Positions 16,949 through 25,800 of a stretch of DNA of 64,000 nt are shown here, piece after piece. Each line of letters opens with the position of its first letter. The stretch's first letter is position 1. Under the pieces are notes generated by a model. It was not told the origin of the DNA. It did not search any database and was given only the letters and a program-made list of their open reading frames with translations. Origin of the DNA: Pelomyxa schiedti (Eukaryota > Protista > Evosea); the NCBI GenBank assembly GCA_020536535.1, contig JAHLWZ010000633.1:43407-107406 (forward strand), in the 5' to 3' direction. A program made the position numbers and the translations under genes.

Positions 16949-18257
16949 ATGGCGCAGCCCGAGGCGACATCCACAACCACAACCGCCACAACGACAGACG
17001 CGTATGATTTTGTTGGATTCCTAGAAGCGGTTCAAGGCGGGAAGCTAGGCCAGGTAGTGGCGATTGTGGCTGCGCGGCCAGGGCTATTATGGGACAAGGA
17101 CGAGAGGGGAATGTGCGGGCTGTGCTGGGCCGCCTACTTTGACGAGGCCGATGTGGCAGTATGGTTGATCAACGCCCGTGCTGCTGCTATCAAGACTGTG
17201 CGTGTTGCCGCGATGTTTTGTACTTGTGGGTTGTGGCTGGTTTTTTGTTTGTTTGTTTGTTTATTTGTTTGTTTGTTTTTCTGTTTGTCTGGACTTCCTT
17301 TGCCCTTTGTTTCAATTTAGTTATTCAGTAATGATGCAGAGAGGTGGAATTCTTGTGGGAAGTGAAGGAACTCCGAGAAATGGGGAGTCAGTGGTGTGGG
17401 GGTGTGATAAGAGGGGCGGCACAGCACTACACCATGCTGCTGTAAATGGGAGTTTAAGAAGTCTGCGGGCATTTGGAGAATTGTCGACTTCTATCGAGCC
17501 ACCGTGGCTGGCCACCAATGAATGGGGTGAGACTTGTCTGCATGTGGCTGCAGCTGCAGGCATTCCAAAGACTCACAGTGTTGTCAACATATTACTGCAA
17601 TTTGCCCCTGTACTATCTGATGCGAAGGATAAATGGGGAAGAGTAGCTTTTCAGGAGCATAATCCCAATGACCCGGCCACTACCACACAGCTTCCGGATC
17701 CCTCATCCCTTCACCCAAACATCAAAAGCAGTCTTGAGGCAGAGTTCATGAAGATGAGGGAACAGTGGTCTGAACGATCACGCAAAGTAGACATTCTAGA
17801 AAAAGGAATGTTCAAGGAACATCAAGTACCAAACCCATCCGCATCTGCACCACCAAAACTTGCCCCGGCCAGAAGAGTGGTTCTGTCCAAAATAGTGGAA
17901 TATCCCGGGGACCCCATGGTTGTAACCCGGGCTCTCAGCCAAGATTGTGATTTCAAAGGGTCTGATATGTACGGCCTCACAGCTTTACACAAATTCAGTA
18001 GCTGGGACAAGCCGGATTTAATGCAGCTTGTTTTACCCCTACTCACCCCCGAGGAAATTCACCAACGCGGAGGGGATTCTCACCAAACAGCCCTTGAAAT
18101 GGCTGCAGAAATGCAGGCCTGGAGGGCTGTGGACTTGTTACTCTCACACTCCTCAACCACTCCAACACAGATCGCAGCACTCCTTTCTGATGTGCAAAGA
18201 AGGGGTGGTGATCCGGAACTCTCTGCTCATTTATTGAAAAGTGGGAAACAAGTGTGA
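16949..18257 (+). CDS. Ankyrin repeat protein
   Basis: DERGMCGLCWAAYFD, GGTALHHAAVNG, GETCLHVAAAAG, YGLTALHKFSSWD, QTALEMAAEM. One intron containing (TTTG)n near 17200..17340. Confidence 0.8.
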
Positions 18258-18385
18258 TGTGAACAAAATAAACCCGTTGGTTTTTCTTTTACAAATAGCA
18301 AAATTCCGTTGGGAATTTTGTCTCGGGCTTTGTGAAGGTGGATGCTGTGTATGCACAAAAATATGCCACAACCCTTCTCGGCCGA

Positions 18386-21300
18386 TCAAGAGTCAGTTTG
18401 CTTCCACTGGTTGGCATTGAAGGTTAAATTAGCCTGTAGATCGGATAATTTGGAACCAGGTTCCGTATCAGGAGACTGTGCATCAGCAAAAGCCGAAACA
18501 GCAGTAAGTAGTGGTGCTACGAAAAACTGAATGAACGCCTTCTGGCAGGTAGATACTCTCGGCGCAGTTCTATCCATAAATGCGGATTTTGTTAGCATGT
18601 GGGTGGCTTCTTGGTCTCCTTGCCGGTAGAATTCCTGTGTAGTTTTCAGTGGACTGATTTGGGAGTATGGTGTTGTGGTTGTGGGGGAGTTAGGAGACTT
18701 ACTTCCATGATGAGGTGTGTCCATTTGGTGGCAGTATCCCATGACCGCATTTGGTTTGAAACATCGGCCAATTTTATAAATATTTGAAATACTAGAGTTA
18801 CATCACCCTAATAGAGTAATGAATGGGTACTGCAGGGTTTTGTCTTGAAAGAAAATAGATTACCTTATGGGAATAGTCAAAGTCGTTAACGGATTTCTTT
18901 GATGTAAATTGACTCAATATTTCTACATGCTTGGACATGCTTGTGGAATGTAAGTACTTCATGAGGTAACCAAAAGTTTCTTACTCCGTGGCTAAAACTA
19001 AGCTGGTCACCATTTGGTGGAATTCGATGAATTCTTGCTTTCTTGGGATTAGTGATATCTTTTAGTAGTTTATCAAGAACCTGAGTGAAAAAAGATAGCC
19101 AATTACTGCCGCCATGCAATGTAAATTCAAAAGATTCTGTCAGGTGAAAATTTTCAAGTATCTATATCAAAGGTGGGTTTTTCATAGGGAAAGTCTCGGG
19201 AACTGTACGGATATCCCGTTATACGTGAGAGCAAGGGGATCAAGAATGCGGTACAGGAAGTTGTTGCTTTAGTTTTGTTGGGAAACAAATTAAGGTAATG
19301 GGTACAAACTTTACACCAGGGTGCCCAAAATCATGTACAACTGCCTAATGGGAAAGTGAGGAAATAAGAAGATTTCGTAGAAAGCAACGGCAAAAAGAAG
19401 AGACAAGATCCACATTGGCGATATCCGCTCGTATACAGATGGGGCTAAGTTCAGTAATAAAAAGTGAGTTGCTTGAACCACATCGGCAGCGTGCATGACA
19501 TTGTGGTACGGGTTGTTCAAATACCTGAACTTAAATGTATCATGAAATACAATTAGAATGTACAAACCCCTTCGAAATCCCTTGTAGCCAGGTTTGAAAT
19601 GCGCCTTGATTTATATTGAATTTCTCAAAGAGCCCGTGAGATTCAAAAATTGGTGTAGCTACTTCACACAGAACCTGGTCTGTTTAGGAAATCTCTTGAT
19701 TAGGGCCAGTAGGGTTTATAAACCATGTACCTGGGCAGTACTTGAAGACAGAGAAGGCCCAGTTGTCAAGAATTTTCTCTCCACAAGGTAATTTCACAGT
19801 CCTTGAGTTGTCCAATTGGTTGTGTTTGGATAGACAAAAAAAAGATACTCTAAAAGTATAGAGTGCTGGTCAAGTGCCTCGTTCTTTGCCTGTGGAGCAA
19901 GCTGGTCAAGAAGGAACGCATCCACCTCGGAATCCATAGCTAAATCTGGTAAACAATACAATCTGCCATTCATTTGTTTACTGTTCATTAGTCCAGCTTT
20001 TCTTTGTCCCACAAAATCAACTCTATGAAGCCCATTGCAGGCAATCAACTGGATGATTTTTTCAATAACCAAGTGATCCTCTTTATTGAGTCCTAGTTTC
20101 GACGTTAGAGCTCTAAAACCAGAAAAAATAAACAACTGTGCTTCTTGTGAATTTCTTGCAACTTTTTAATTGCCGATTCTGCAGGAGTTTTGAGTAGGTG
20201 CGAGGAGAGTGGCTGAGATAAAACAGAAACCTATTGAGATATGAAAATGACGAGGATACCACGTTATCATACTCTTCGTTTGAAATGTCTAATGACCAAC
20301 AATAGGGCAATAATCGTCACAAGGAGAAAAGCTATAACTACTGCTGCGGCGCTTGCAGTTTTCCCTACCATTGATTTTTTCCCTTCTGCTATGAATTAAT
20401 ATCAAATTGGGAACTATTACGTACTATTTATTGTTATAGATATCGTCTTTTCAGTGCTAAAGCAAAGTCCAGAAATAGCATCCACCACAGAAATAGTTAT
20501 GGAGCCAATGTAGGGGAGTCTGTTGCCAATATATGTAACTTGTATAGTAACAGTTTCAGAGCCCCCTAAAGTAACATTTTGCGTGATATTGCCTGCCAGA
20601 TCTGAGAAAAAGAAAAGAAGGTCGTCATGTGACAAACATTTAAATAGGTGTGTCATATTCTCAGAAAAATCCACAACAAGTGGGACATGTCCAGAATTTT
20701 GAAGAAAAATGTTAAATGACACAGGAAGGTCATCAAGTCTGACATCTGCACTGAGTACTTCTGGTGTGACAGTAAAGTTGTGGTCTTCAAAGAGGTAAAA
20801 AAAAAAAAAAAACCACTGGAAAGAACAAACTGGAGAGTATATCACTCTGAGGGACAGCTATCACAACAGTCCAAGGAAGTAAGTCCAGTGGTTGCCGGGA
20901 GTAAATCCACGTTGTCCCATTATGATCAATGGTGGTAGTTCCAGCACTTTCTAAACCATCTAGTAACTGGAGAGCAATGAATAGCTACAAGACTGACTAT
21001 CTGCACTACCTCCGTGAAATCCCATCCAATAGCTGCTGACAAAGACGGTTGGCTCCGAACAGTGAAATTGAAGGAGGGTCCAAACAGTTCTGCGTAAACC
21101 CAAGTATTTGCTGATAAGATATACCCCTTTTTAGACAGGAGCAGGCTGAACCCTAATTGAGAGTAAGAGAAGGCTTTCCACTCTCATACCATTTGGAGTT
21201 GAATGAATCGATTCCATTATCTTGCAAGTGTCTGCCATTGAAATAATACCCGTGACAGCGGAAATGAACTCTCCGTCACTACTATACAAAGGGGCAAGGA

Positions 21301-22542
21301 CTTGGATCATCATTTCTATGCGTTGTGTTACCAATTTATTTATAAATAAGTACTATTCTAACCTGTGACTGGATAGTAAGGTTCTGACCACTTCGAAGAA
21401 CGGTCGGGGTCATTTTCTGGCCATACCAGTCCCCATGATGGGGGCATGTAGTCTGGGTTTCGGGAGTATTCTACAATGGTGAGGTTTGTTGATCTCCAGT
21501 TTGCCCAAGGGGTTACTACTATCCTAATATTGACTAAGAAGTGTATTTGCACAAGAAAAGTGACGCACGATAATGAGACATTGGTAACACTTGCCCACAT
21601 TTTCGGAATATATTTCAAATTTTTTGTGTTGACATCGGCAGATGTCGCCAGGTGCCTGCCTAGAGCGAGCTGCTTACTTGCTTTGCAGAATCGCTCACAA
21701 CTTACTCCAAGACTTGTGTCTTAACAAGAGAAAAATAAACTTTCGAAAATCAAAGGTAGGATGATACTGAGGTAGTTGGCGGAAATCCAGTCTAACCAAT
21801 ATGGATTACAGGGGCAGGGAGCTGTCCGATTCACAAGCACTGGCTTGAGAGCCCGCCGTACAATAGCTGACTGTGAGAAAAAATGCTAAGTGTCCGAAAA
21901 AGATAAGTACTATCAAACCTCTGCTACCCTATCAGGGGCAAAATCGGAGGCAGAACCAGCTGAAGGACCTTTTGTTCTTTTAAAAACTCCAAATTACGGC
22001 AGTTGAATCGACCTGAAGTTAAAATAGTCATTCTTGACATGTAGCTTTTCCATAGGAGTTGTTCCTCGGCACTAGGATTCCTTTCAATGTATTCCAGAGT
22101 AGAAACCATTGCTTCAGTCATCTTGTGTGTTTGTTTAAAGAACAGTAACAACATGAGGCAACTCTTCATAATGCGTGATCATATTATGGAGGGATGTGTG
22201 CCTTACATGTTGCAATTCCACATAAGGTGGTTGAATTCTCAGAACTGCATCTTTAGTCAGAGCAATAAGTCCCTCCAGAGTACACACGGCCCACTCATCA
22301 GTTACACTAGCACACAGTGCTGTTTGTCCACAAAACCACAATGCCACTGGTATTTTTTTGTTTTGAGGGATAAAAACAAAGTTAGTTTGCCATTGAACTG
22401 GAGCAACAGAGTAGCACAGATGGTTGTTGTGGTTGTATTATTAGGCCAGATAGCAGGAATAAAAAAAAAATTCAAGAAAAGCTGCTATCCTACAAGTAAG
22501 GACCAAAATGCACGTGGTGCCTGGCGGTTGTTGGCCCGTCAT
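18386..22542 (-). CDS. Single-pass receptor-type class I cyclic nucleotide phosphodiesterase (signal peptide - dCache - Ig-like - TM - PDEase_I)
   Basis: Signal peptide MTGQQPPGTTCILVLT|LALWFCGQTALCA. Cache motifs NPDYMPPSW..WSEPY, APLYSSDGEFISAVTGIISM, WTVVIAVPQSDIL. Ig-like FNIFLQNSGHVPL..TVTIQVTY..GSITISV. TM AAAVVIAFLLVTIIALLLVI-RHFKRR. PDE motifs NPYHNVMHAADV, VHDFGHPGV|NNFL, LENFH, KLADVSN, EFYRQGDQE, QKAFIQF. Confidence 0.82.
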
Positions 22543-22811: not shown

Positions 22812-25800
22812 TTAAATCGACCACTTTTGGAGTAGATCATCGTCGTCGAGGGCGTAGAAGGGTTCAGCGGTCTGCGATATCATTATTTCCCCACACAAAG
22901 GACACTCTGAGGCTATCAGGTCGTCGTACTCTTGTTTGGCCCTTTCGTACGCAGCAATTGCAGCATCATCTTGTTCACCTTTTTTTTGTTTGCATATAAG
23001 GTTATTTGTTTGTTTGCTTGCTTGCTTGTTGGTTTGTTTGTTACCTGGCAAAGCTCCGGTTCGGATAACGGGAGGGCAGGCGAGGATTGATTTGAGGTCC
23101 AGGGCTCTTTGCCTTTGTGTTGGGGTAAGGAACCCAATCATCTGTATTTTGTAGAAGTGGTAATGAGTGAGAAGGGAAATGTTACAACTTGGGTACATGT
23201 GTATGAAGACAATCGGCGTGCATGACGTGCCGGCAAGGGAAATAGAAGAACTGTTTCGCCAAGGCGGGACAATGGCAGATTTCACATTGCTGGGTTGCAG
23301 GCACAACTCCACATTTGTTTCTAAGAGCTCCGATATCTTTTCTTATGAGATTTGCAGATTTTGTTGCTTCTGCCATTTCGTCTTTCAACGCTGCTATGTG
23401 TTTATTGTACTCGTCCAAGGATCTACATATTTCCTCCTTCATGAATGGTAACCATGAGGGGCGAAAGTATATCCTAAACCTTGAAATCGTCAATCACGGT
23501 AAATTCAGGGAAGAAAGGAAGAATGTCTTCAATCTTGAGTAGGTTTTCACATTCCCGAAGGAAGGACATTACACTGAAAGAAGGTTACCAGAGAAAACAA
23601 GTGGCATTGTATGGAGACTTACTATTTGATATTTGCATTCTTGTTGGCTGACTTAGCACTGTTTTCGACAACGTATTTGGCAATTTTGAGCCACAGACGC
23701 TTTTTCAATGCCTCATCTTCTGGTTTTTGGGCCTGCATCTTTGCGAGACCAATATCAACTCCTAAAGCCAAATCAACAGCTTCCTCATGCATATTCATAT
23801 TGCTATAGATGACAACACAAGCTCGCTTTTTTCCCAACTTAGTACAAAGACGTAGAGCATATTTGGAGTCATAGTGTCTTGGTGTTTCCTGAATTTATCT
23901 TTAGTGGAGAAAATTACTTGTAGTGTTGCACATTCAAAAAGCGTTGTAATGATGTTTCTACTTCCTGCTGTGCGTAGAGAGACAGGAGGTAATTATGAAC
24001 TGCAGGATCGTGGTTTGTGCGAATACAAAACTCTAGATACCTTACTGCTTGATTCTTGAAAGGTTAGCGGGATCTGCAAGAGTTTTAATAACAACCTCCT
24101 CTTTAGGGAACTTGGTGGGATCGTAACGCATCAAAGCGGGGAACAGTTGTTTGGGTTGAAGAACAACTTTGGAGGAAATCCAGCATGTCACCAAATCGAC
24201 TGGCTCATGGCAAATAATAACTGGTGAAAATTTATAAAACAATGTCTCATGAGCTTGAGTCTTTGAGTATAATTATTAGTGGTGATTTGGTTTCCCTTGA
24301 ACAAACCAGTTCCATCATGACACTAATGGCTTGCTTGAATGCATTCAACTGCAAAAAGTAGGATAACAATCTCTCGTAGTCCTCTATGAGGAATGCATAG
24401 CGAAGCATATCTTCAGTTCTGCCATGTGCCGCAATAAGACTAAATGTCGTTTCCACATTCAAAGACTCCTGATATTATCAACAGAAAGAACAACAAAGTT
24501 GCTCAGTGACCTTGTACTTATCTAAGAAGGCTTTGAATTCGTCCATGACAACGTTAGCCTTTGATGAACTACCCTCTTGTAGGTTGAGCTTATGAAGATA
24601 TAATTCGGTAACCCAGGTACAAATGGCAGTTATTTGCATTTTGTGCTAGAAGCCCGTTTGATACTCAATTTTAGAAGTAAAAACTACCTGGGGATTGAGG
24701 GTGGCCAATTTATCTGTTAAGTAACGCAGAAGGTACGAGCGCTTTTCTTTATTGATAAATTTGAGGGCCACTTTTTCAAATGGAATCCTTGTTTTCGCAT
24801 ATGAAAGGGCAGATAAGTCGTATTGTTCCTTAGATTGATGAGATAATTTTTGGACTGTAAGGTCATACTGTGGCAAAGTAGTGTTCTGCTTGAGCAGTCC
24901 AAACAATATCCTGCTTCTCTGGGTCACCCTATTTATTTTAACACGAAGGTAGCACATATAAAATAGTACTTTGCAGTAGTCAATTGCCGATTGCCACTCT
25001 TTTTGTTCCATTTTTTGTTTCCAAACATCTCTATCCTCATCAATTACAAGCATTTCATAAATTAGATTGGTGGCACAAATGAGGATTGTGCTGTGCTCTT
25101 TGCTCATATCTCGTAGTATGCAATGTATTTTACCACATTTCTAAAGGAAGTAAACTTTAAACAAGAATATTCACAGTGAGTGTGTACAGGGCTTAATTCC
25201 AGCTCGAAAACGGGTTCGTCTGTCAACGAATTTACACATTGAATCATTTGATCATACACCAACAAATAGTGGAATTCAGTAAGGGCCATTCCAAGGGGTG
25301 GATCAGCAGGAATCGATGTATCTTTAACGGGATAACTAAAACAATGTAAATACCTTTTATTTAGAAGAATAGAAATTACTGAATAAGTGATGTATCAGCT
25401 GTGACGATATCACCAGGTCCTTGAAAACCAAAACTGATTTTCCCATGATAAATACCAGGCCCTAAAGTAATCAAATTTTTGATTTACATGTAAAAGAAAA
25501 AAAGAACTAGGTACCAGTCAACCAAGCAAAATGGGAGGCATTTGCCCTTCGATATTTGCAGAAGAAACAAAGTTCTGCATTCTGTAACCTCACGCCTTGC
25601 GGAATTTCCGTGAATTTAGGACCTTCTTGGTGTTGAAAGATAGCTTCAAAAGTGGGTCCTCCTTGTTGTTTGTTGAATTAAATGAGCCAAAAAAAATCAG
25701 AGTTACCAATGAATTGATAAAAACGAGAGGTGGTTGTAGCAATTACAAAATATCTCGATTTATCCTCAGGACACCTTTCCCATCTTAGGCCAGTTATTGC

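What the first reader, a model, noticed from the sequence alone, without database searches (positions are those of the whole stretch)
18386..22542. Receptor phosphodiesterase: extracellular dCache + Ig-like sensor wired through one TM helix to a class I PDE
Seen: signal peptide, double-Cache motifs (D..P.W..WSEPY; APLY..G..I.AV.GII; W.VVIAVP.SDI), an Ig-like beta domain, one TM helix, a juxtamembrane linker and a PDE with intact metal ligands (YHN..H, HD, D). Established: dCache is the main extracellular small-ligand sensor of bacterial signalling and of alpha2-delta subunits, whereas animal class I PDEs use intracellular GAF/PAS/UCR regulators. Inference: a ligand-gated cAMP/cGMP-degrading receptor, the counterpart of receptor cyclases, possibly used in chemosensing.
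Basis: partly seen in the sequence, partly recalled or inferred. Interest (0 to 1): 0.72.

Follow-up and report, generated by a model that had tools for sequence, protein, structure and literature searches.

The report
Cache-sensor receptor phosphodiesterase gene in Pelomyxa
This amoeba gene encodes a single-pass membrane protein with a bacterial-style chemical sensor (double Cache domain) outside and an intact cAMP/cGMP-destroying enzyme inside; no searched paper describes this build, and whether an outside chemical controls the enzyme is untested.

Summary
On the minus strand, 22542 to 18386, lies one intron-rich gene: 26 exons, 25 GT-AG introns of 36-147 nt, about 958 aa.

- **Build:** signal peptide, a divergent double-Cache ectodomain, a PapD/MSP-type Ig-like domain, one transmembrane helix, a four-helix juxtamembrane module and a class I PDE.
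- **PDE:** all 34 checked near-invariant PDE family positions (metal-binding His/Asp motifs among them) are kept.
- **Gene model:** spliced RNA contigs confirm the last ten introns. They stop before the transmembrane and Cache exons.
- **One gene:** continuity across both halves rests on an unbroken reading frame, tiny introns, and 22-23 of 25 intron positions shared with tandem paralogues.
- **Family:** at least eight further loci of this kind are found in Pelomyxa schiedti. NCBI names them as ordinary PDEs.
- **Cache evidence:** a family profile hits only dCache sensor structures in the PDB (best E 1.9e-5). Pfam dCache_1 reaches E 3e-8 in a paralogue but stays below Pfam's threshold. A paralogue's predicted proximal module matches dCache proximal modules (Z about 10). 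The distal module has sequence support only.

Ligand control of the enzyme is inferred, not shown. No searched paper describes Cache plus class I PDE. This scan had already noted paralogues elsewhere in the genome. Verdict: a new variant of known kinds.

The parts
18303..22542 (-). Whole transcription unit as modelled: 26 coding exons, 25 GT-AG introns, CDS 22542..18386 (about 958 aa), and 3' UTR reaching at least 18303
   Evidence: Manual model refined against paralogues. The spliced RNA contig ends at 18303. 22/25 and 23/25 intron positions and phases are shared with paralogues P0075 and P0076.
22494..22542 (-). Exon 1: start codon and the first 16 residues of the predicted signal peptide. 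This is the least certain exon, and the 147-nt intron after it is unconfirmed.
   Evidence: It supplies the in-frame ATG missing from the open frame that holds exon 2 (stop to stop 22437-22138). Hydrophobic peak at aa 11-29. Paralogues P0076 and P0004 have clear N-terminal signal peptides before the same EWxVCT(L/M)EG motif.
20831..22346 (-). Exons 2-10: ectodomain, aa 17-387. It holds an N-terminal helix, a Cys-containing family-specific region (CxCNPYW, SCERFC) and the dCache-like distal and proximal modules.
   Evidence: The family profile hits only dCache sensor structures in the PDB (best E 1.9e-5). Pfam dCache_1 gives E 3e-8 and 1.4e-7 in paralogues P0002 and P0074, and E 0.07 on window piece 20790-20984. 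There are 10 NxS/T sequons outside against 1 inside.
21190..21523 (-). Exons 7-8: core of the membrane-distal Cache module (PPSW, WSEPYY, APLYSSDGEFISAVTGIISM)
   Evidence: Aligns to the distal modules of Mlp24 (6iop), Mlp37 (3c8c), PscC (6mni) and a histidine-kinase sensor (9nia). The AlphaFold confidence here is low, so the evidence is sequence only.
20831..21152 (-). Exons 9-10: membrane-proximal Cache (PAS-like) module (GFSLLLSKKGYILSANT ... PWTVVIAVPQSDI)
   Evidence: The AlphaFold model of paralogue P0075, residues 226-360, matches the proximal modules of dCache structures 3li8, 9hvj, 6mni, 8bmv and 4wy9 at Z 8.4-10.0. Mapped to window aa 252-385.
20425..20784 (-). Exons 11-12: Ig-like beta-sandwich of the PapD/MSP/ASH type, between the Cache domain and the membrane
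   Evidence: VIA Z 11-11.7 at rmsd 2.2-2.8 A to MSP, VAP, CEP192-ASH and pilus-chaperone domains, and Foldseek E 7e-6 to the OCRL ASH domain, for the paralogue model. The window exons align with it. The 36-nt intron at 20602-20637 is shared with P0076.
20291..20350 (-). The single transmembrane helix (aa 508-527), followed by RHFKRR
   Evidence: Kyte-Doolittle mean of 3.3 over 19 residues; no other segment comes close apart from the signal peptide. In the paralogue's AlphaFold model the helix runs on past the membrane (H2-40).
19731..20290 (-). Juxtamembrane module, aa 528 to about 650: four conserved helices (TPAESAIKKL, EDHLVIEKIIQLIA, LHRVDF, SEVDAFLLDQL) and a variable loop
   Evidence: Conserved in all paralogues and in Mastigella transcripts. 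Predicted helices H51-65, H70-84, H88-103 and H107-117 at pLDDT about 60-86. No Pfam family matches.
18386..19801 (-). Exons 17-26: class I PDE catalytic domain (aa about 646-934) and a short C-terminal tail
   Evidence: All ten introns are confirmed by spliced RNA contigs. Pfam PDEase_I matches. The paralogue model superposes on human PDE3, PDE4 and PDE1 catalytic domains (TM 0.7-0.85, rmsd about 2 A). All 34 checked near-invariant residues are kept.

Best explanation
The gene encodes a type I single-pass membrane protein of Pelomyxa schiedti, and is one member of a family with at least nine loci.

Outside the cell, after a signal peptide, sit a divergent double-Cache small-molecule sensor and a PapD/MSP-type Ig-like stalk domain. 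Inside sit a conserved four-helix juxtamembrane module and a catalytically intact class I cyclic-nucleotide phosphodiesterase.

Shown: the domain order, the intact catalytic residues, splicing and expression of the 3' half, and conservation of the whole build and its intron positions in paralogues.

Inferred: an extracellular ligand bound by the Cache domain changes the geometry of a receptor dimer. That change passes through the Ig-like stalk, the TM helix and the juxtamembrane helices to raise or lower PDE activity, so an outside chemical sets cytosolic cAMP/cGMP. This would make it the degradative counterpart of receptor cyclases.

Because the Ig-like domain interrupts the Cache-to-TM helix, transmission probably resembles that of single-pass receptor enzymes (dimer rearrangement) rather than the bacterial piston. 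The direction of regulation, the ligand and the cAMP/cGMP preference are unknown.
For: Gene model: an unbroken frame runs through 26 exons with GT-AG introns of 36-147 nt. The ten 3' introns are confirmed by spliced RNA contigs from two single-cell RNA runs of one sample. 22/25 and 23/25 intron positions and phases are shared with the tandem paralogues P0075 and P0076.

Full-length homology: 55% identity to P0075 over aa 8-945, and 47% to P0002.

PDE: Pfam hits, all 34 checked near-invariant residues kept, and a fold match at TM 0.7-0.85.

Cache:
- Pfam dCache_1 hits fall in the same region of six paralogues, with E from 3e-8 to 0.25.
- The family profile hits 16 of 16 dCache sensors in the PDB, best E 1.9e-5.
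- The proximal module matches dCache proximal modules at Z 8.4-10.
- The nearest ESM Atlas clusters are mostly Cache or sensor families, though the top hit is unannotated and all scores are under 0.9, so this is a lead only.

Topology: signal peptides in the paralogues, one TM helix, 10 sequons outside against 1 inside, and conserved ectodomain cysteines.

The TM, juxtamembrane and PDE cassette also occurs on one Trinity transcript in Mastigella eilhardi, behind a different ectodomain.
Against: - No RNA contig spans the Cache exons, the TM exon and the PDE exons together; the contig ends at 19892.
- No family member reaches Pfam's dCache_1 gathering score of 45 bits; the best is 33.8.
- The first 225 or so residues of the ectodomain model have pLDDT mostly under 50 (short stretches reach about 60-70), so the distal module's fold is not shown.
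- Taken alone, the distal and proximal profiles give only E 0.013 and 0.35.
- The canonical amino-acid-binding residues appear absent, so no ligand can be proposed.
- The Ig-like spacer has no precedent in Cache receptors, so coupling is conjecture.
- The window's own protein was not found in any protein database searched.
Confidence: 0.6

Rival explanations
1. A membrane-anchored but constitutive PDE. The ectodomain serves adhesion, localisation or turnover, or is a decayed sensor, and does not regulate catalysis; the protein simply degrades cyclic nucleotide close to the membrane.
For: The ectodomain is strongly diverged from ligand-binding dCache domains: it is below the Pfam threshold, it lacks the amino-acid motif, and it carries an insert of about 100 aa with cysteines. 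An Ig-like domain breaks the helix that transmits signals in bacterial Cache receptors. No ligand is known.
Against: The Cache core motifs and the juxtamembrane helices are conserved across paralogues that are only 33-55% identical to the window protein, which points to selection on both. The family has expanded to at least nine loci, as chemoreceptor families typically do. Related PDEs carry other ligand-binding ectodomains, ANF_receptor and NMT1/PBP-like.
Confidence: 0.2
2. A gene-model artefact: two adjacent genes, one a Cache-Ig-TM membrane protein and the other a soluble PDE, read here as one.
For: The RNA contigs cover only 18303-19892. NCBI annotates one paralogous locus as two proteins, P0077 and P0001.
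Against: - Only 36-50 nt separate consecutive exons between the TM exon and the PDE exons, the frame stays open, and no in-frame stop or promoter-sized gap exists.
- P0077 itself runs from the ectodomain through the TM helix and linker into the start of the PDE region, so that split looks like an annotation break.
- Five other full-length NCBI models, and Mastigella transcripts, join an ectodomain, TM helix and PDE in one product.
- Intron positions are conserved along the whole length.
Confidence: 0.05
3. The ectodomain is a generic extracellular PAS-like or other alpha/beta domain, not a true double-Cache, so the link to bacterial chemoreceptor sensors is only superficial.
For: The distal module is not confidently folded. 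PAS domains such as VqmA score as high as Cache modules against the proximal module (Z 10.7). The Pfam score is below threshold.
Against: All 16 PDB profile hits are double-Cache sensor domains, and the alignments span the junction of the distal and proximal modules. The Pfam hits cover dCache_1 profile positions 113-239 of 240, and MCP-like_PDC_1 hits in P0002. The structural matches fall on the proximal modules of dCache chains, residues about 170-300.
Confidence: 0.1
4. An ecto-phosphodiesterase: the catalytic domain faces outward and degrades extracellular cAMP, as reported for Dictyostelium Pde4 (from my own knowledge, not checked here).
For: Amoebozoa do use extracellular cAMP and ecto-PDEs (my own knowledge). 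Lysines also precede the TM helix.
Against: An N-terminal signal peptide plus one TM helix places the C-terminus in the cytosol. There are 10 sequons and conserved cysteines in the N-terminal part against 1 sequon in the C-terminal part, and RHFKRR follows the helix.
Confidence: 0.03

Closest known systems
Rhodopsin phosphodiesterase (Rh-PDE) of choanoflagellates
   Same: A membrane sensor fused through a linker to a C-terminal class I PDE, so that an external signal acts directly on cyclic-nucleotide breakdown (10.1101/2020.04.14.040642; PMC12004702, abstracts listed).
   Different: In Rh-PDE the sensor is a multi-pass retinal-binding rhodopsin and the signal is light. Here the sensor is an extracellular Cache plus Ig-like ectodomain on a single TM helix, and the presumed signal is a chemical. 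No rhodopsin domain is present.
Bacterial and archaeal dCache_1 receptors (chemoreceptors, histidine kinases, GGDEF/EAL enzymes, cyclases)
   Same: An extracytoplasmic double-Cache sensor N-terminal to a TM helix and a cytoplasmic signalling enzyme. The best sequence and structure matches are to Mlp24, Mlp37, PscC, PctA and mmHK1S-Z2.
   Different: - The output here is a eukaryotic class I (HD-type) cAMP/cGMP PDE, not among the outputs listed for prokaryotic dCache_1 (PMC8915833).
- A signal peptide takes the place of TM1.
- An Ig-like domain lies between Cache and TM.
- The distal module carries a Cys-containing insert of about 100 aa.
- The score is below Pfam's threshold.
Known eukaryotic Cache proteins (alpha2-delta/CACHD1, plant and fungal histidine kinases, a Naegleria Cache adenylate cyclase)
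   Same: A Cache domain in a eukaryotic membrane signalling protein. The Naegleria Cache cyclase is the synthetic counterpart in cAMP signalling (PMC4822843).
   Different: PMC8915833 states that all eukaryotic dCache_1 proteins it found carry a VWA insertion. No VWA hit appears in any paralogue scanned here. The output is a PDE, which neither paper lists.
Single-pass receptor guanylyl cyclases
   Same: The same logic: a ligand-binding ectodomain, one TM helix, a juxtamembrane regulatory region and a cyclic-nucleotide enzyme. A chytrid relative of this PDE even carries the ANF_receptor domain (P0040).
   Different: The reaction runs the other way (hydrolysis), the ectodomain is unrelated, and there is no kinase-homology domain. 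This is an analogy only.
Dictyostelium RegA (receiver domain plus PDE)
   Same: An amoebozoan class I PDE under sensory control. NCBI names three of the paralogues 'regA'.
   Different: No Response_reg domain is found in any family member. Any control here would come from a covalently attached ectodomain, not from a phosphorelay. The 'regA' names are misleading.

Membership tests
Class I cyclic-nucleotide phosphodiesterase (Pfam PDEase_I, PF00233) | Profile match at or above the curated threshold | tested here: met
   Window exon pieces score 25.0 and 39.7 bits against a cut-off of 24.8. Paralogues score 160-246 bits.
Class I cyclic-nucleotide phosphodiesterase (Pfam PDEase_I, PF00233) | Metal-binding and catalytic motifs (H-N-x-x-H, H-D-x-x-H, E-x-x-H, T-D, D) and the purine-clamp glutamine | tested here: met
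   YHNVMH 701, HDFGHPG 744, ENFH 774, TDMSKH 815, LADVSN 854 and CQKAFI 906. All 34 checked near-invariant columns of a 35-sequence alignment are kept.
Class I cyclic-nucleotide phosphodiesterase (Pfam PDEase_I, PF00233) | All-helical PDE catalytic fold | tested here: met
   Tested on paralogue P0075 (55% identical), not on the window protein itself. AlphaFold pLDDT exceeds 90 over the domain. Foldseek gives E 2.5e-19, TM 0.7-0.85 and rmsd about 2 A to human PDE3B, PDE4 and PDE1B.
Class I cyclic-nucleotide phosphodiesterase (Pfam PDEase_I, PF00233) | Hydrolysis of cAMP and/or cGMP | not testable with these tools
   Needs an enzyme assay. The sequence is about equally distant from human PDE3, PDE1, PDE4 and PDE9 (173-184 bits), so no specificity can be read off.
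dCache_1 (PF02743), Cache superfamily | Pfam profile match at or above the gathering score (45 bits) | tested here: not met
   The best paralogues give 33.8 bits (E 3.2e-8, P0002) and 31.8 bits (P0074). The closest paralogues give 11-15 bits, and a window piece gives 13.1 bits.
dCache_1 (PF02743), Cache superfamily | Significant sequence-profile similarity to solved dCache sensor domains | tested here: met
   The family ectodomain profile hits 16 PDB sequences, all double-Cache sensors. Eight have E at or below 0.008, and the best is 1.9e-5 (6iop, Mlp24).
dCache_1 (PF02743), Cache superfamily | Membrane-proximal PAS-like module | tested here: met
   Residues 226-360 of the paralogue model match the proximal modules of 3li8, 9hvj, 6mni, 8bmv and 4wy9 at Z 8.4-10.0 and rmsd 2.1-2.8 A.
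dCache_1 (PF02743), Cache superfamily | Membrane-distal PAS-like module after a long N-terminal helix | tested here: inconclusive
   There is sequence support only: the distal-only profile gives E 0.013 to 6iop with all 7 hits being Cache sensors, and MCP-like_PDC_1 gives E 4e-4 in P0002. The AlphaFold pLDDT is under 50 there, with only 7 sequences in the alignment.
dCache_1 (PF02743), Cache superfamily | Extracytoplasmic position directly N-terminal to a TM helix | tested here: not met
   The extracytoplasmic position is predicted (signal peptide, sequons). However, an Ig-like domain of about 110 aa separates the Cache domain from the TM helix.
dCache_1AA (amino-acid-sensing subclass, PMC8915833) | The AA motif, including the Asp that binds the ligand's amino group and the R-x-W-Y segment | tested here: not met
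   In the Mlp24 alignment the Asp of FYDVEL pairs with Thr in the family consensus, which by eye corresponds to Ile in the window protein. The segment aligned to W-Y is PPSW and has no Arg. These are low-scoring alignments, so the result is tentative.
Eukaryotic alpha2-delta-type dCache (with VWA insertion) | A VWA domain inserted in the dCache_1 domain | tested here: not met
   No VWA family appears among the Pfam hits of any paralogue at E up to 1.
PapD-like / MSP / ASH Ig-like beta-sandwich | Seven-stranded Ig-like sandwich superposable on MSP or PapD domains | tested here: met
   Residues 361-472 of the paralogue model give Z 11.7 (1row), 11.4 (6tqr, 6fvi) and 11.3 (2qsv) at rmsd 2.2-2.8 A over 97-108 residues. 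No Pfam family matches, apart from a weak DUF1573 hit in P0004.
Rhodopsin-PDE (enzyme rhodopsin) | An N-terminal microbial rhodopsin domain | tested here: not met
   There is only one TM helix besides the signal peptide, and no rhodopsin family appears in the Pfam scans.
RegA-type PDE | An N-terminal response-regulator receiver domain | tested here: not met
   No Response_reg hit appears in P0074, P0075 or P0076, although NCBI names them 'regA'.

The most novel reading that the evidence does not exclude
Archamoebae, and perhaps some chytrid fungi, possess a so far undescribed class of single-pass 'receptor phosphodiesterases'. Interchangeable ligand-binding ectodomains (double-Cache in Pelomyxa, a Cys-rich domain in Mastigella, NMT1/PBP-like in Mastigamoeba, ANF_receptor in Physocladia) would directly gate a cytosolic class I PDE. 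These would be chemically gated mirror images of receptor cyclases, and the Pelomyxa Cache type would be a eukaryotic dCache without the VWA insertion that PMC8915833 reports for every eukaryotic dCache_1 protein it found.
Probability: 0.45. Interest if true: 0.75.

Novelty: new variant of a known kind. Interest (0 to 1): 0.62.

Why it matters
Direct receptor control of cyclic-nucleotide breakdown is known so far from light-gated rhodopsin-PDEs. Chemical signals are thought to reach PDEs indirectly, through Ca2+/calmodulin, cGMP-binding GAF domains, phosphorylation or phosphorelay (my own knowledge).

A Cache-gated PDE would be a one-protein path from an outside chemical to lower cAMP/cGMP. 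It would also extend the short list of eukaryotic Cache proteins: alpha2-delta, plant and fungal histidine kinases, and one Naegleria cyclase (PMC4822843). And it would give an exception to the reported rule that eukaryotic dCache_1 always carries a VWA insert (PMC8915833).

The family's expansion in an anaerobic sediment amoeba suggests a chemosensory repertoire. A ligand-switchable PDE could also be useful as a chemogenetic tool alongside Rh-PDE.

The claim is testable with ordinary ectodomain binding screens and PDE assays.

Tried and rejected
- **Statistical gene finders.** Two home-made dynamic-programming gene finders (codon and dicodon log-odds plus an intron penalty) recovered at most 2 of the 10 RNA-confirmed introns and were discarded. 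The model was built by hand and corrected against paralogues.
- **First manual model.** It had three in-frame retained introns and one wrong acceptor. Paralogue alignment exposed them and they were fixed.
- **Window's own protein.** It was not retrieved by the exhaustive search with the last exon as bait, or by three word searches with a full-length paralogue or family alignments as query. It seems unannotated or fragmentary in public sets.
- **Deepening the alignment.** Word searches with the family alignments found only Pelomyxa proteins, even at E up to 10. The ectodomain alignment could not be deepened, and the AlphaFold model of the N-terminal half stayed poor.
- **Foldseek on the ectodomain.** On the whole ectodomain model its listed top-50 hits held no Cache structure and were mostly Ig-like-domain matches. 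VIA-wide was needed to see the Cache module.
- **Split profiles.** The distal-only and proximal-only profiles lose significance on their own.
- **ESM Atlas.** The machine was busy twice. The third try gave only sub-0.9 leads.
- **RNA evidence.** It could not be extended: the only RNA runs are 3'-biased single-cell libraries kept as contigs.

Full report
**Gene and model**

ORF listing and three-frame translation of the minus strand between 22800 and 18200 show a chain of short open segments, typical of an intron-rich eukaryotic gene. Two public single-cell RNA-seq runs from one sample hold spliced contigs for the 3' part. One 1103-nt contig covers 18303-19892 and skips ten segments of 43-68 nt, each CT..AC on the plus strand, which is GT..AG on the minus strand. 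Joining those exons gives a clean PDE catalytic sequence ending at the stop codon at 18386-18388.

Statistical gene-finding scripts failed, so I built the upstream part by hand. I then corrected it against full-length paralogues. Three in-frame retained introns (45, 36 and 36 nt) were removed and one acceptor was moved.

The final model has 26 exons, 25 GT-AG introns of 36-147 nt, and 958 aa. Independent support for it:
- 22 of its 25 intron positions and phases coincide with those of the NCBI model of paralogue P0075.
- 23 of 25 coincide with P0076, including two of the three introns I had inferred only from alignment gaps.

Two weak points remain:
- Exon 1 and its 147-nt intron have no RNA or paralogue support.
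- Intron 4 has an alternative acceptor 15 nt upstream (21885).

A separate RNA contig at 22776-22980 belongs to the neighbouring gene and bounds the 5' end.

**Organism and family**

Earlier notes of this scan name the genome as Pelomyxa schiedti.

An exhaustive HMMER search with the last exon (82 aa) returned 68 proteins. Aligning my model to them locally showed full-length relatives. Cluster look-ups identified these as NCBI proteins of Pelomyxa schiedti. Word searches added P0074, P0075, P0076 and P0077.

| Paralogue | Identity to the window protein | Aligned span or note |
|---|---|---|
| P0075 | 55% | window aa 8-945 |
| P0076 | 53% | – |
| P0002, P0074 | 47%, 46% | – |
| P0004 | 37% | – |
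| P0026 | 33% | from the Cache core onward |

- P0075 and P0076 are tandem genes on JAHLWZ010000612.1 of GCA_020536535.1.
- None of these proteins is the window's own product, which I could not find in any database.
- Counting P0032 and the split pair P0077/P0001, the genome has at least nine loci of this kind.
- This scan had already flagged three other pieces of the same genome as Cache-PDE receptors. I treat those as leads; they are consistent with the paralogues found here.

**PDE half**

- Pfam PDEase_I passes its threshold on two window exon pieces and scores 160-246 bits in the paralogues.
- The window protein keeps all 34 checked near-invariant positions of a 35-sequence alignment of the closest PDEs. 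These include HNxxH, HDxxH, ExxH, TD, the Asp of LADVSN and the Gln of CQxxFI.
- The AlphaFold model of P0075 residues 505-960 has a mean pLDDT of 83, above 90 in the catalytic domain. It superposes on human PDE3, PDE4 and PDE1 catalytic domains.
- By sequence the domain is about equally distant from human PDE3, PDE1, PDE4 and PDE9. It therefore belongs to no metazoan family, and its substrate preference cannot be inferred.

**Membrane and linker**

One segment, aa 508-527, is strongly hydrophobic and is followed by RHFKRR. In the model this helix continues into the cytosol. After a short loop come four helices that are conserved in all paralogues and in Mastigella eilhardi transcripts. No Pfam family matches this roughly 110-aa module.

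**Ectodomain**

The N-terminal part carries 10 N-glycosylation sequons against 1 in the C-terminal part. It also has cysteines that are invariant in the family, C-x-C-N-P-x-W. Paralogues P0076 and P0004 have textbook signal peptides before the shared EW-x-VCT(L/M)EG motif.

Cache evidence comes at three levels.
1. **Pfam.** dCache_1 hits the same region (profile positions about 113-239 of 240) in six paralogues, with E from 3.2e-8 to 0.25. All are below the 45-bit gathering score. MCP-like_PDC_1 hits P0002 at E 4e-4.
2. **PDB profile.** A profile of seven ectodomains searched against all PDB sequences returns 16 hits, and every one is a double-Cache sensor (Mlp24, PscC, mmHK1S, Mlp37, PctA/B/C, McpH and others). 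The best E is 1.9e-5, and the alignments run from the distal module into the proximal one. Split profiles keep the same kind of hits but lose significance.
3. **Structure.** The AlphaFold model of the P0075 ectodomain is poor overall (pLDDT 52, only 7 sequences) but usable from residue 226 on. VIA-align matches residues 226-360 to the membrane-proximal modules of dCache structures at Z 8.4-10.0.

The front of the distal module, which includes a family-specific insert of about 100 aa with cysteines, remains unmodelled. The ectodomain is therefore best called a divergent double-Cache: proximal module shown, distal module supported by sequence only. Nearest ESM Atlas clusters are mostly Cache or sensor families, at sub-threshold scores.

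The domain between Cache and the membrane is a PapD/MSP/ASH-type Ig-like sandwich (Z 11-11.7; Foldseek E about 1e-5).

**One gene or two**

RNA does not bridge the two halves. Five observations argue for a single gene:
- an unbroken frame;
- 36-50-nt introns between the TM, linker and PDE exons;
- conserved intron positions along the whole length;
- five other full-length paralogue models;
- Mastigella Trinity transcripts that encode an ectodomain, TM helix, linker and PDE in one ORF.

I put the two-gene artefact at about 5%.

**Mechanism**

The build is that of a type I receptor enzyme. The most likely working is that a small molecule bound by the Cache domain alters a dimer, and the change reaches the PDE through the stalk, the TM helix and the juxtamembrane helices.

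This is inference. The Ig-like spacer argues against a bacterial-type piston through a continuous helix and favours a dimer-rearrangement mode. The residues that define amino-acid-sensing dCache domains appear absent. The ligand and the sign of regulation are open.

**What is known**

Full-text searches found no paper joining a Cache domain to a class I PDE, and no paper on Pelomyxa PDEs.

- Upadhyay et al. list eukaryotic Cache proteins as alpha2-delta, plant and fungal histidine kinases, and one Naegleria adenylate cyclase (PMC4822843).
- Gumerov et al. state that all eukaryotic dCache_1 proteins they found carry a VWA insert, and that the function of eukaryotic dCache_1 is unknown (PMC8915833). 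No VWA is present here.
- The closest functional precedent is rhodopsin-PDE.

Among the nearest PDE relatives, other sensor-type N-termini occur: ANF_receptor in a chytrid, NMT1/PBP-like in Mastigamoeba and GAF in one protein. dCache was seen only in Pelomyxa.

**Verdict**

It is a new variant of known kinds: a Cache receptor with a new output, or equally a class I PDE with a new sensor. The proteins are already in public annotation under generic or misleading PDE names, and this scan had already noticed paralogous loci.

Noticed in passing
L001:10001-18937 (JAHLWZ010000612.1 of GCA_020536535.1): Two tandem paralogues of the window gene (P0075, 1049 aa; P0076, 896 aa). They have 25 and 24 introns of 38-296 nt, nearly all at the same positions and phases as in the window gene.
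   Followed up: yes
Proteins P0077 and P0001, both on a 69,379-bp Pelomyxa contig that was not fetched: NCBI seems to split one more paralogue in two. One part is 'hypothetical protein Pelo_7094' (ectodomain, TM helix and linker, running into garbled sequence). The other is a 247-aa 'PDE9A' fragment. This is probably an annotation break rather than two genes; I did not check that the two lie next to each other.
   Followed up: partly
Proteins P0012 (Mastigamoeba balamuthi), P0040 (Physocladia obscura) and P0003 (Mastigella eilhardi): Other sensor-like N-termini occur on the closest PDE relatives. P0012 has a signal peptide, an NMT1/THI5-like (periplasmic-binding-protein type) domain and a PDE. 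P0040 has ANF_receptor, a TM helix and a PDE. P0003 has a Cys-rich ectodomain on the same TM, juxtamembrane and PDE cassette as the window gene.
   Followed up: partly
NCBI product names of P0074, P0075, P0076, P0004 and P0001: The names 'regA', 'calcium calmodulin-dependent PDE 1b' and 'PDE9A' are not backed by domain content: no receiver domain is present, and the catalytic domain is equidistant from human PDE1, PDE3, PDE4 and PDE9.
   Followed up: yes
window:22776-23493: The neighbouring minus-strand gene has its own RNA contig (22776-22980). Its ORFs have a RING-like Cys/His pattern (CEICHCP...FPCRHVMHADC). It bounds the 5' end of the PDE gene, leaving an intergenic gap of about 230 nt.
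   Followed up: no
window:16805-18257: A plus-strand ankyrin-repeat gene ends at 18257, only about 45 nt from the 3' end of the PDE transcript (18303). The two genes converge in a very compact arrangement.
   Followed up: no
window:17190-17320 and 22930-23090: (TTTG/TTGT)n-like low-complexity tracts, which read as FVCLFVCLF in translation, lie on both sides of the region, in or near the neighbouring genes.
   Followed up: no
window:18607-18641: Several DNA-run contigs break or branch here, and one contig joins 18641 to 20854 with 2202 other letters between. Depth also rises locally. This suggests a short repeat or an assembly-graph fork inside intron 25 and exon 26, possibly from paralogues.
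   Followed up: no
window:20389-20424, 20602-20637, 19946-19981, 21153-21189: Four predicted introns are only 36-37 nt long, shorter than any RNA-confirmed intron of this gene (43-68 nt). All four are at positions shared with P0076, two of them (20602-20637 and 19946-19981) with P0076 only.
   Followed up: partly
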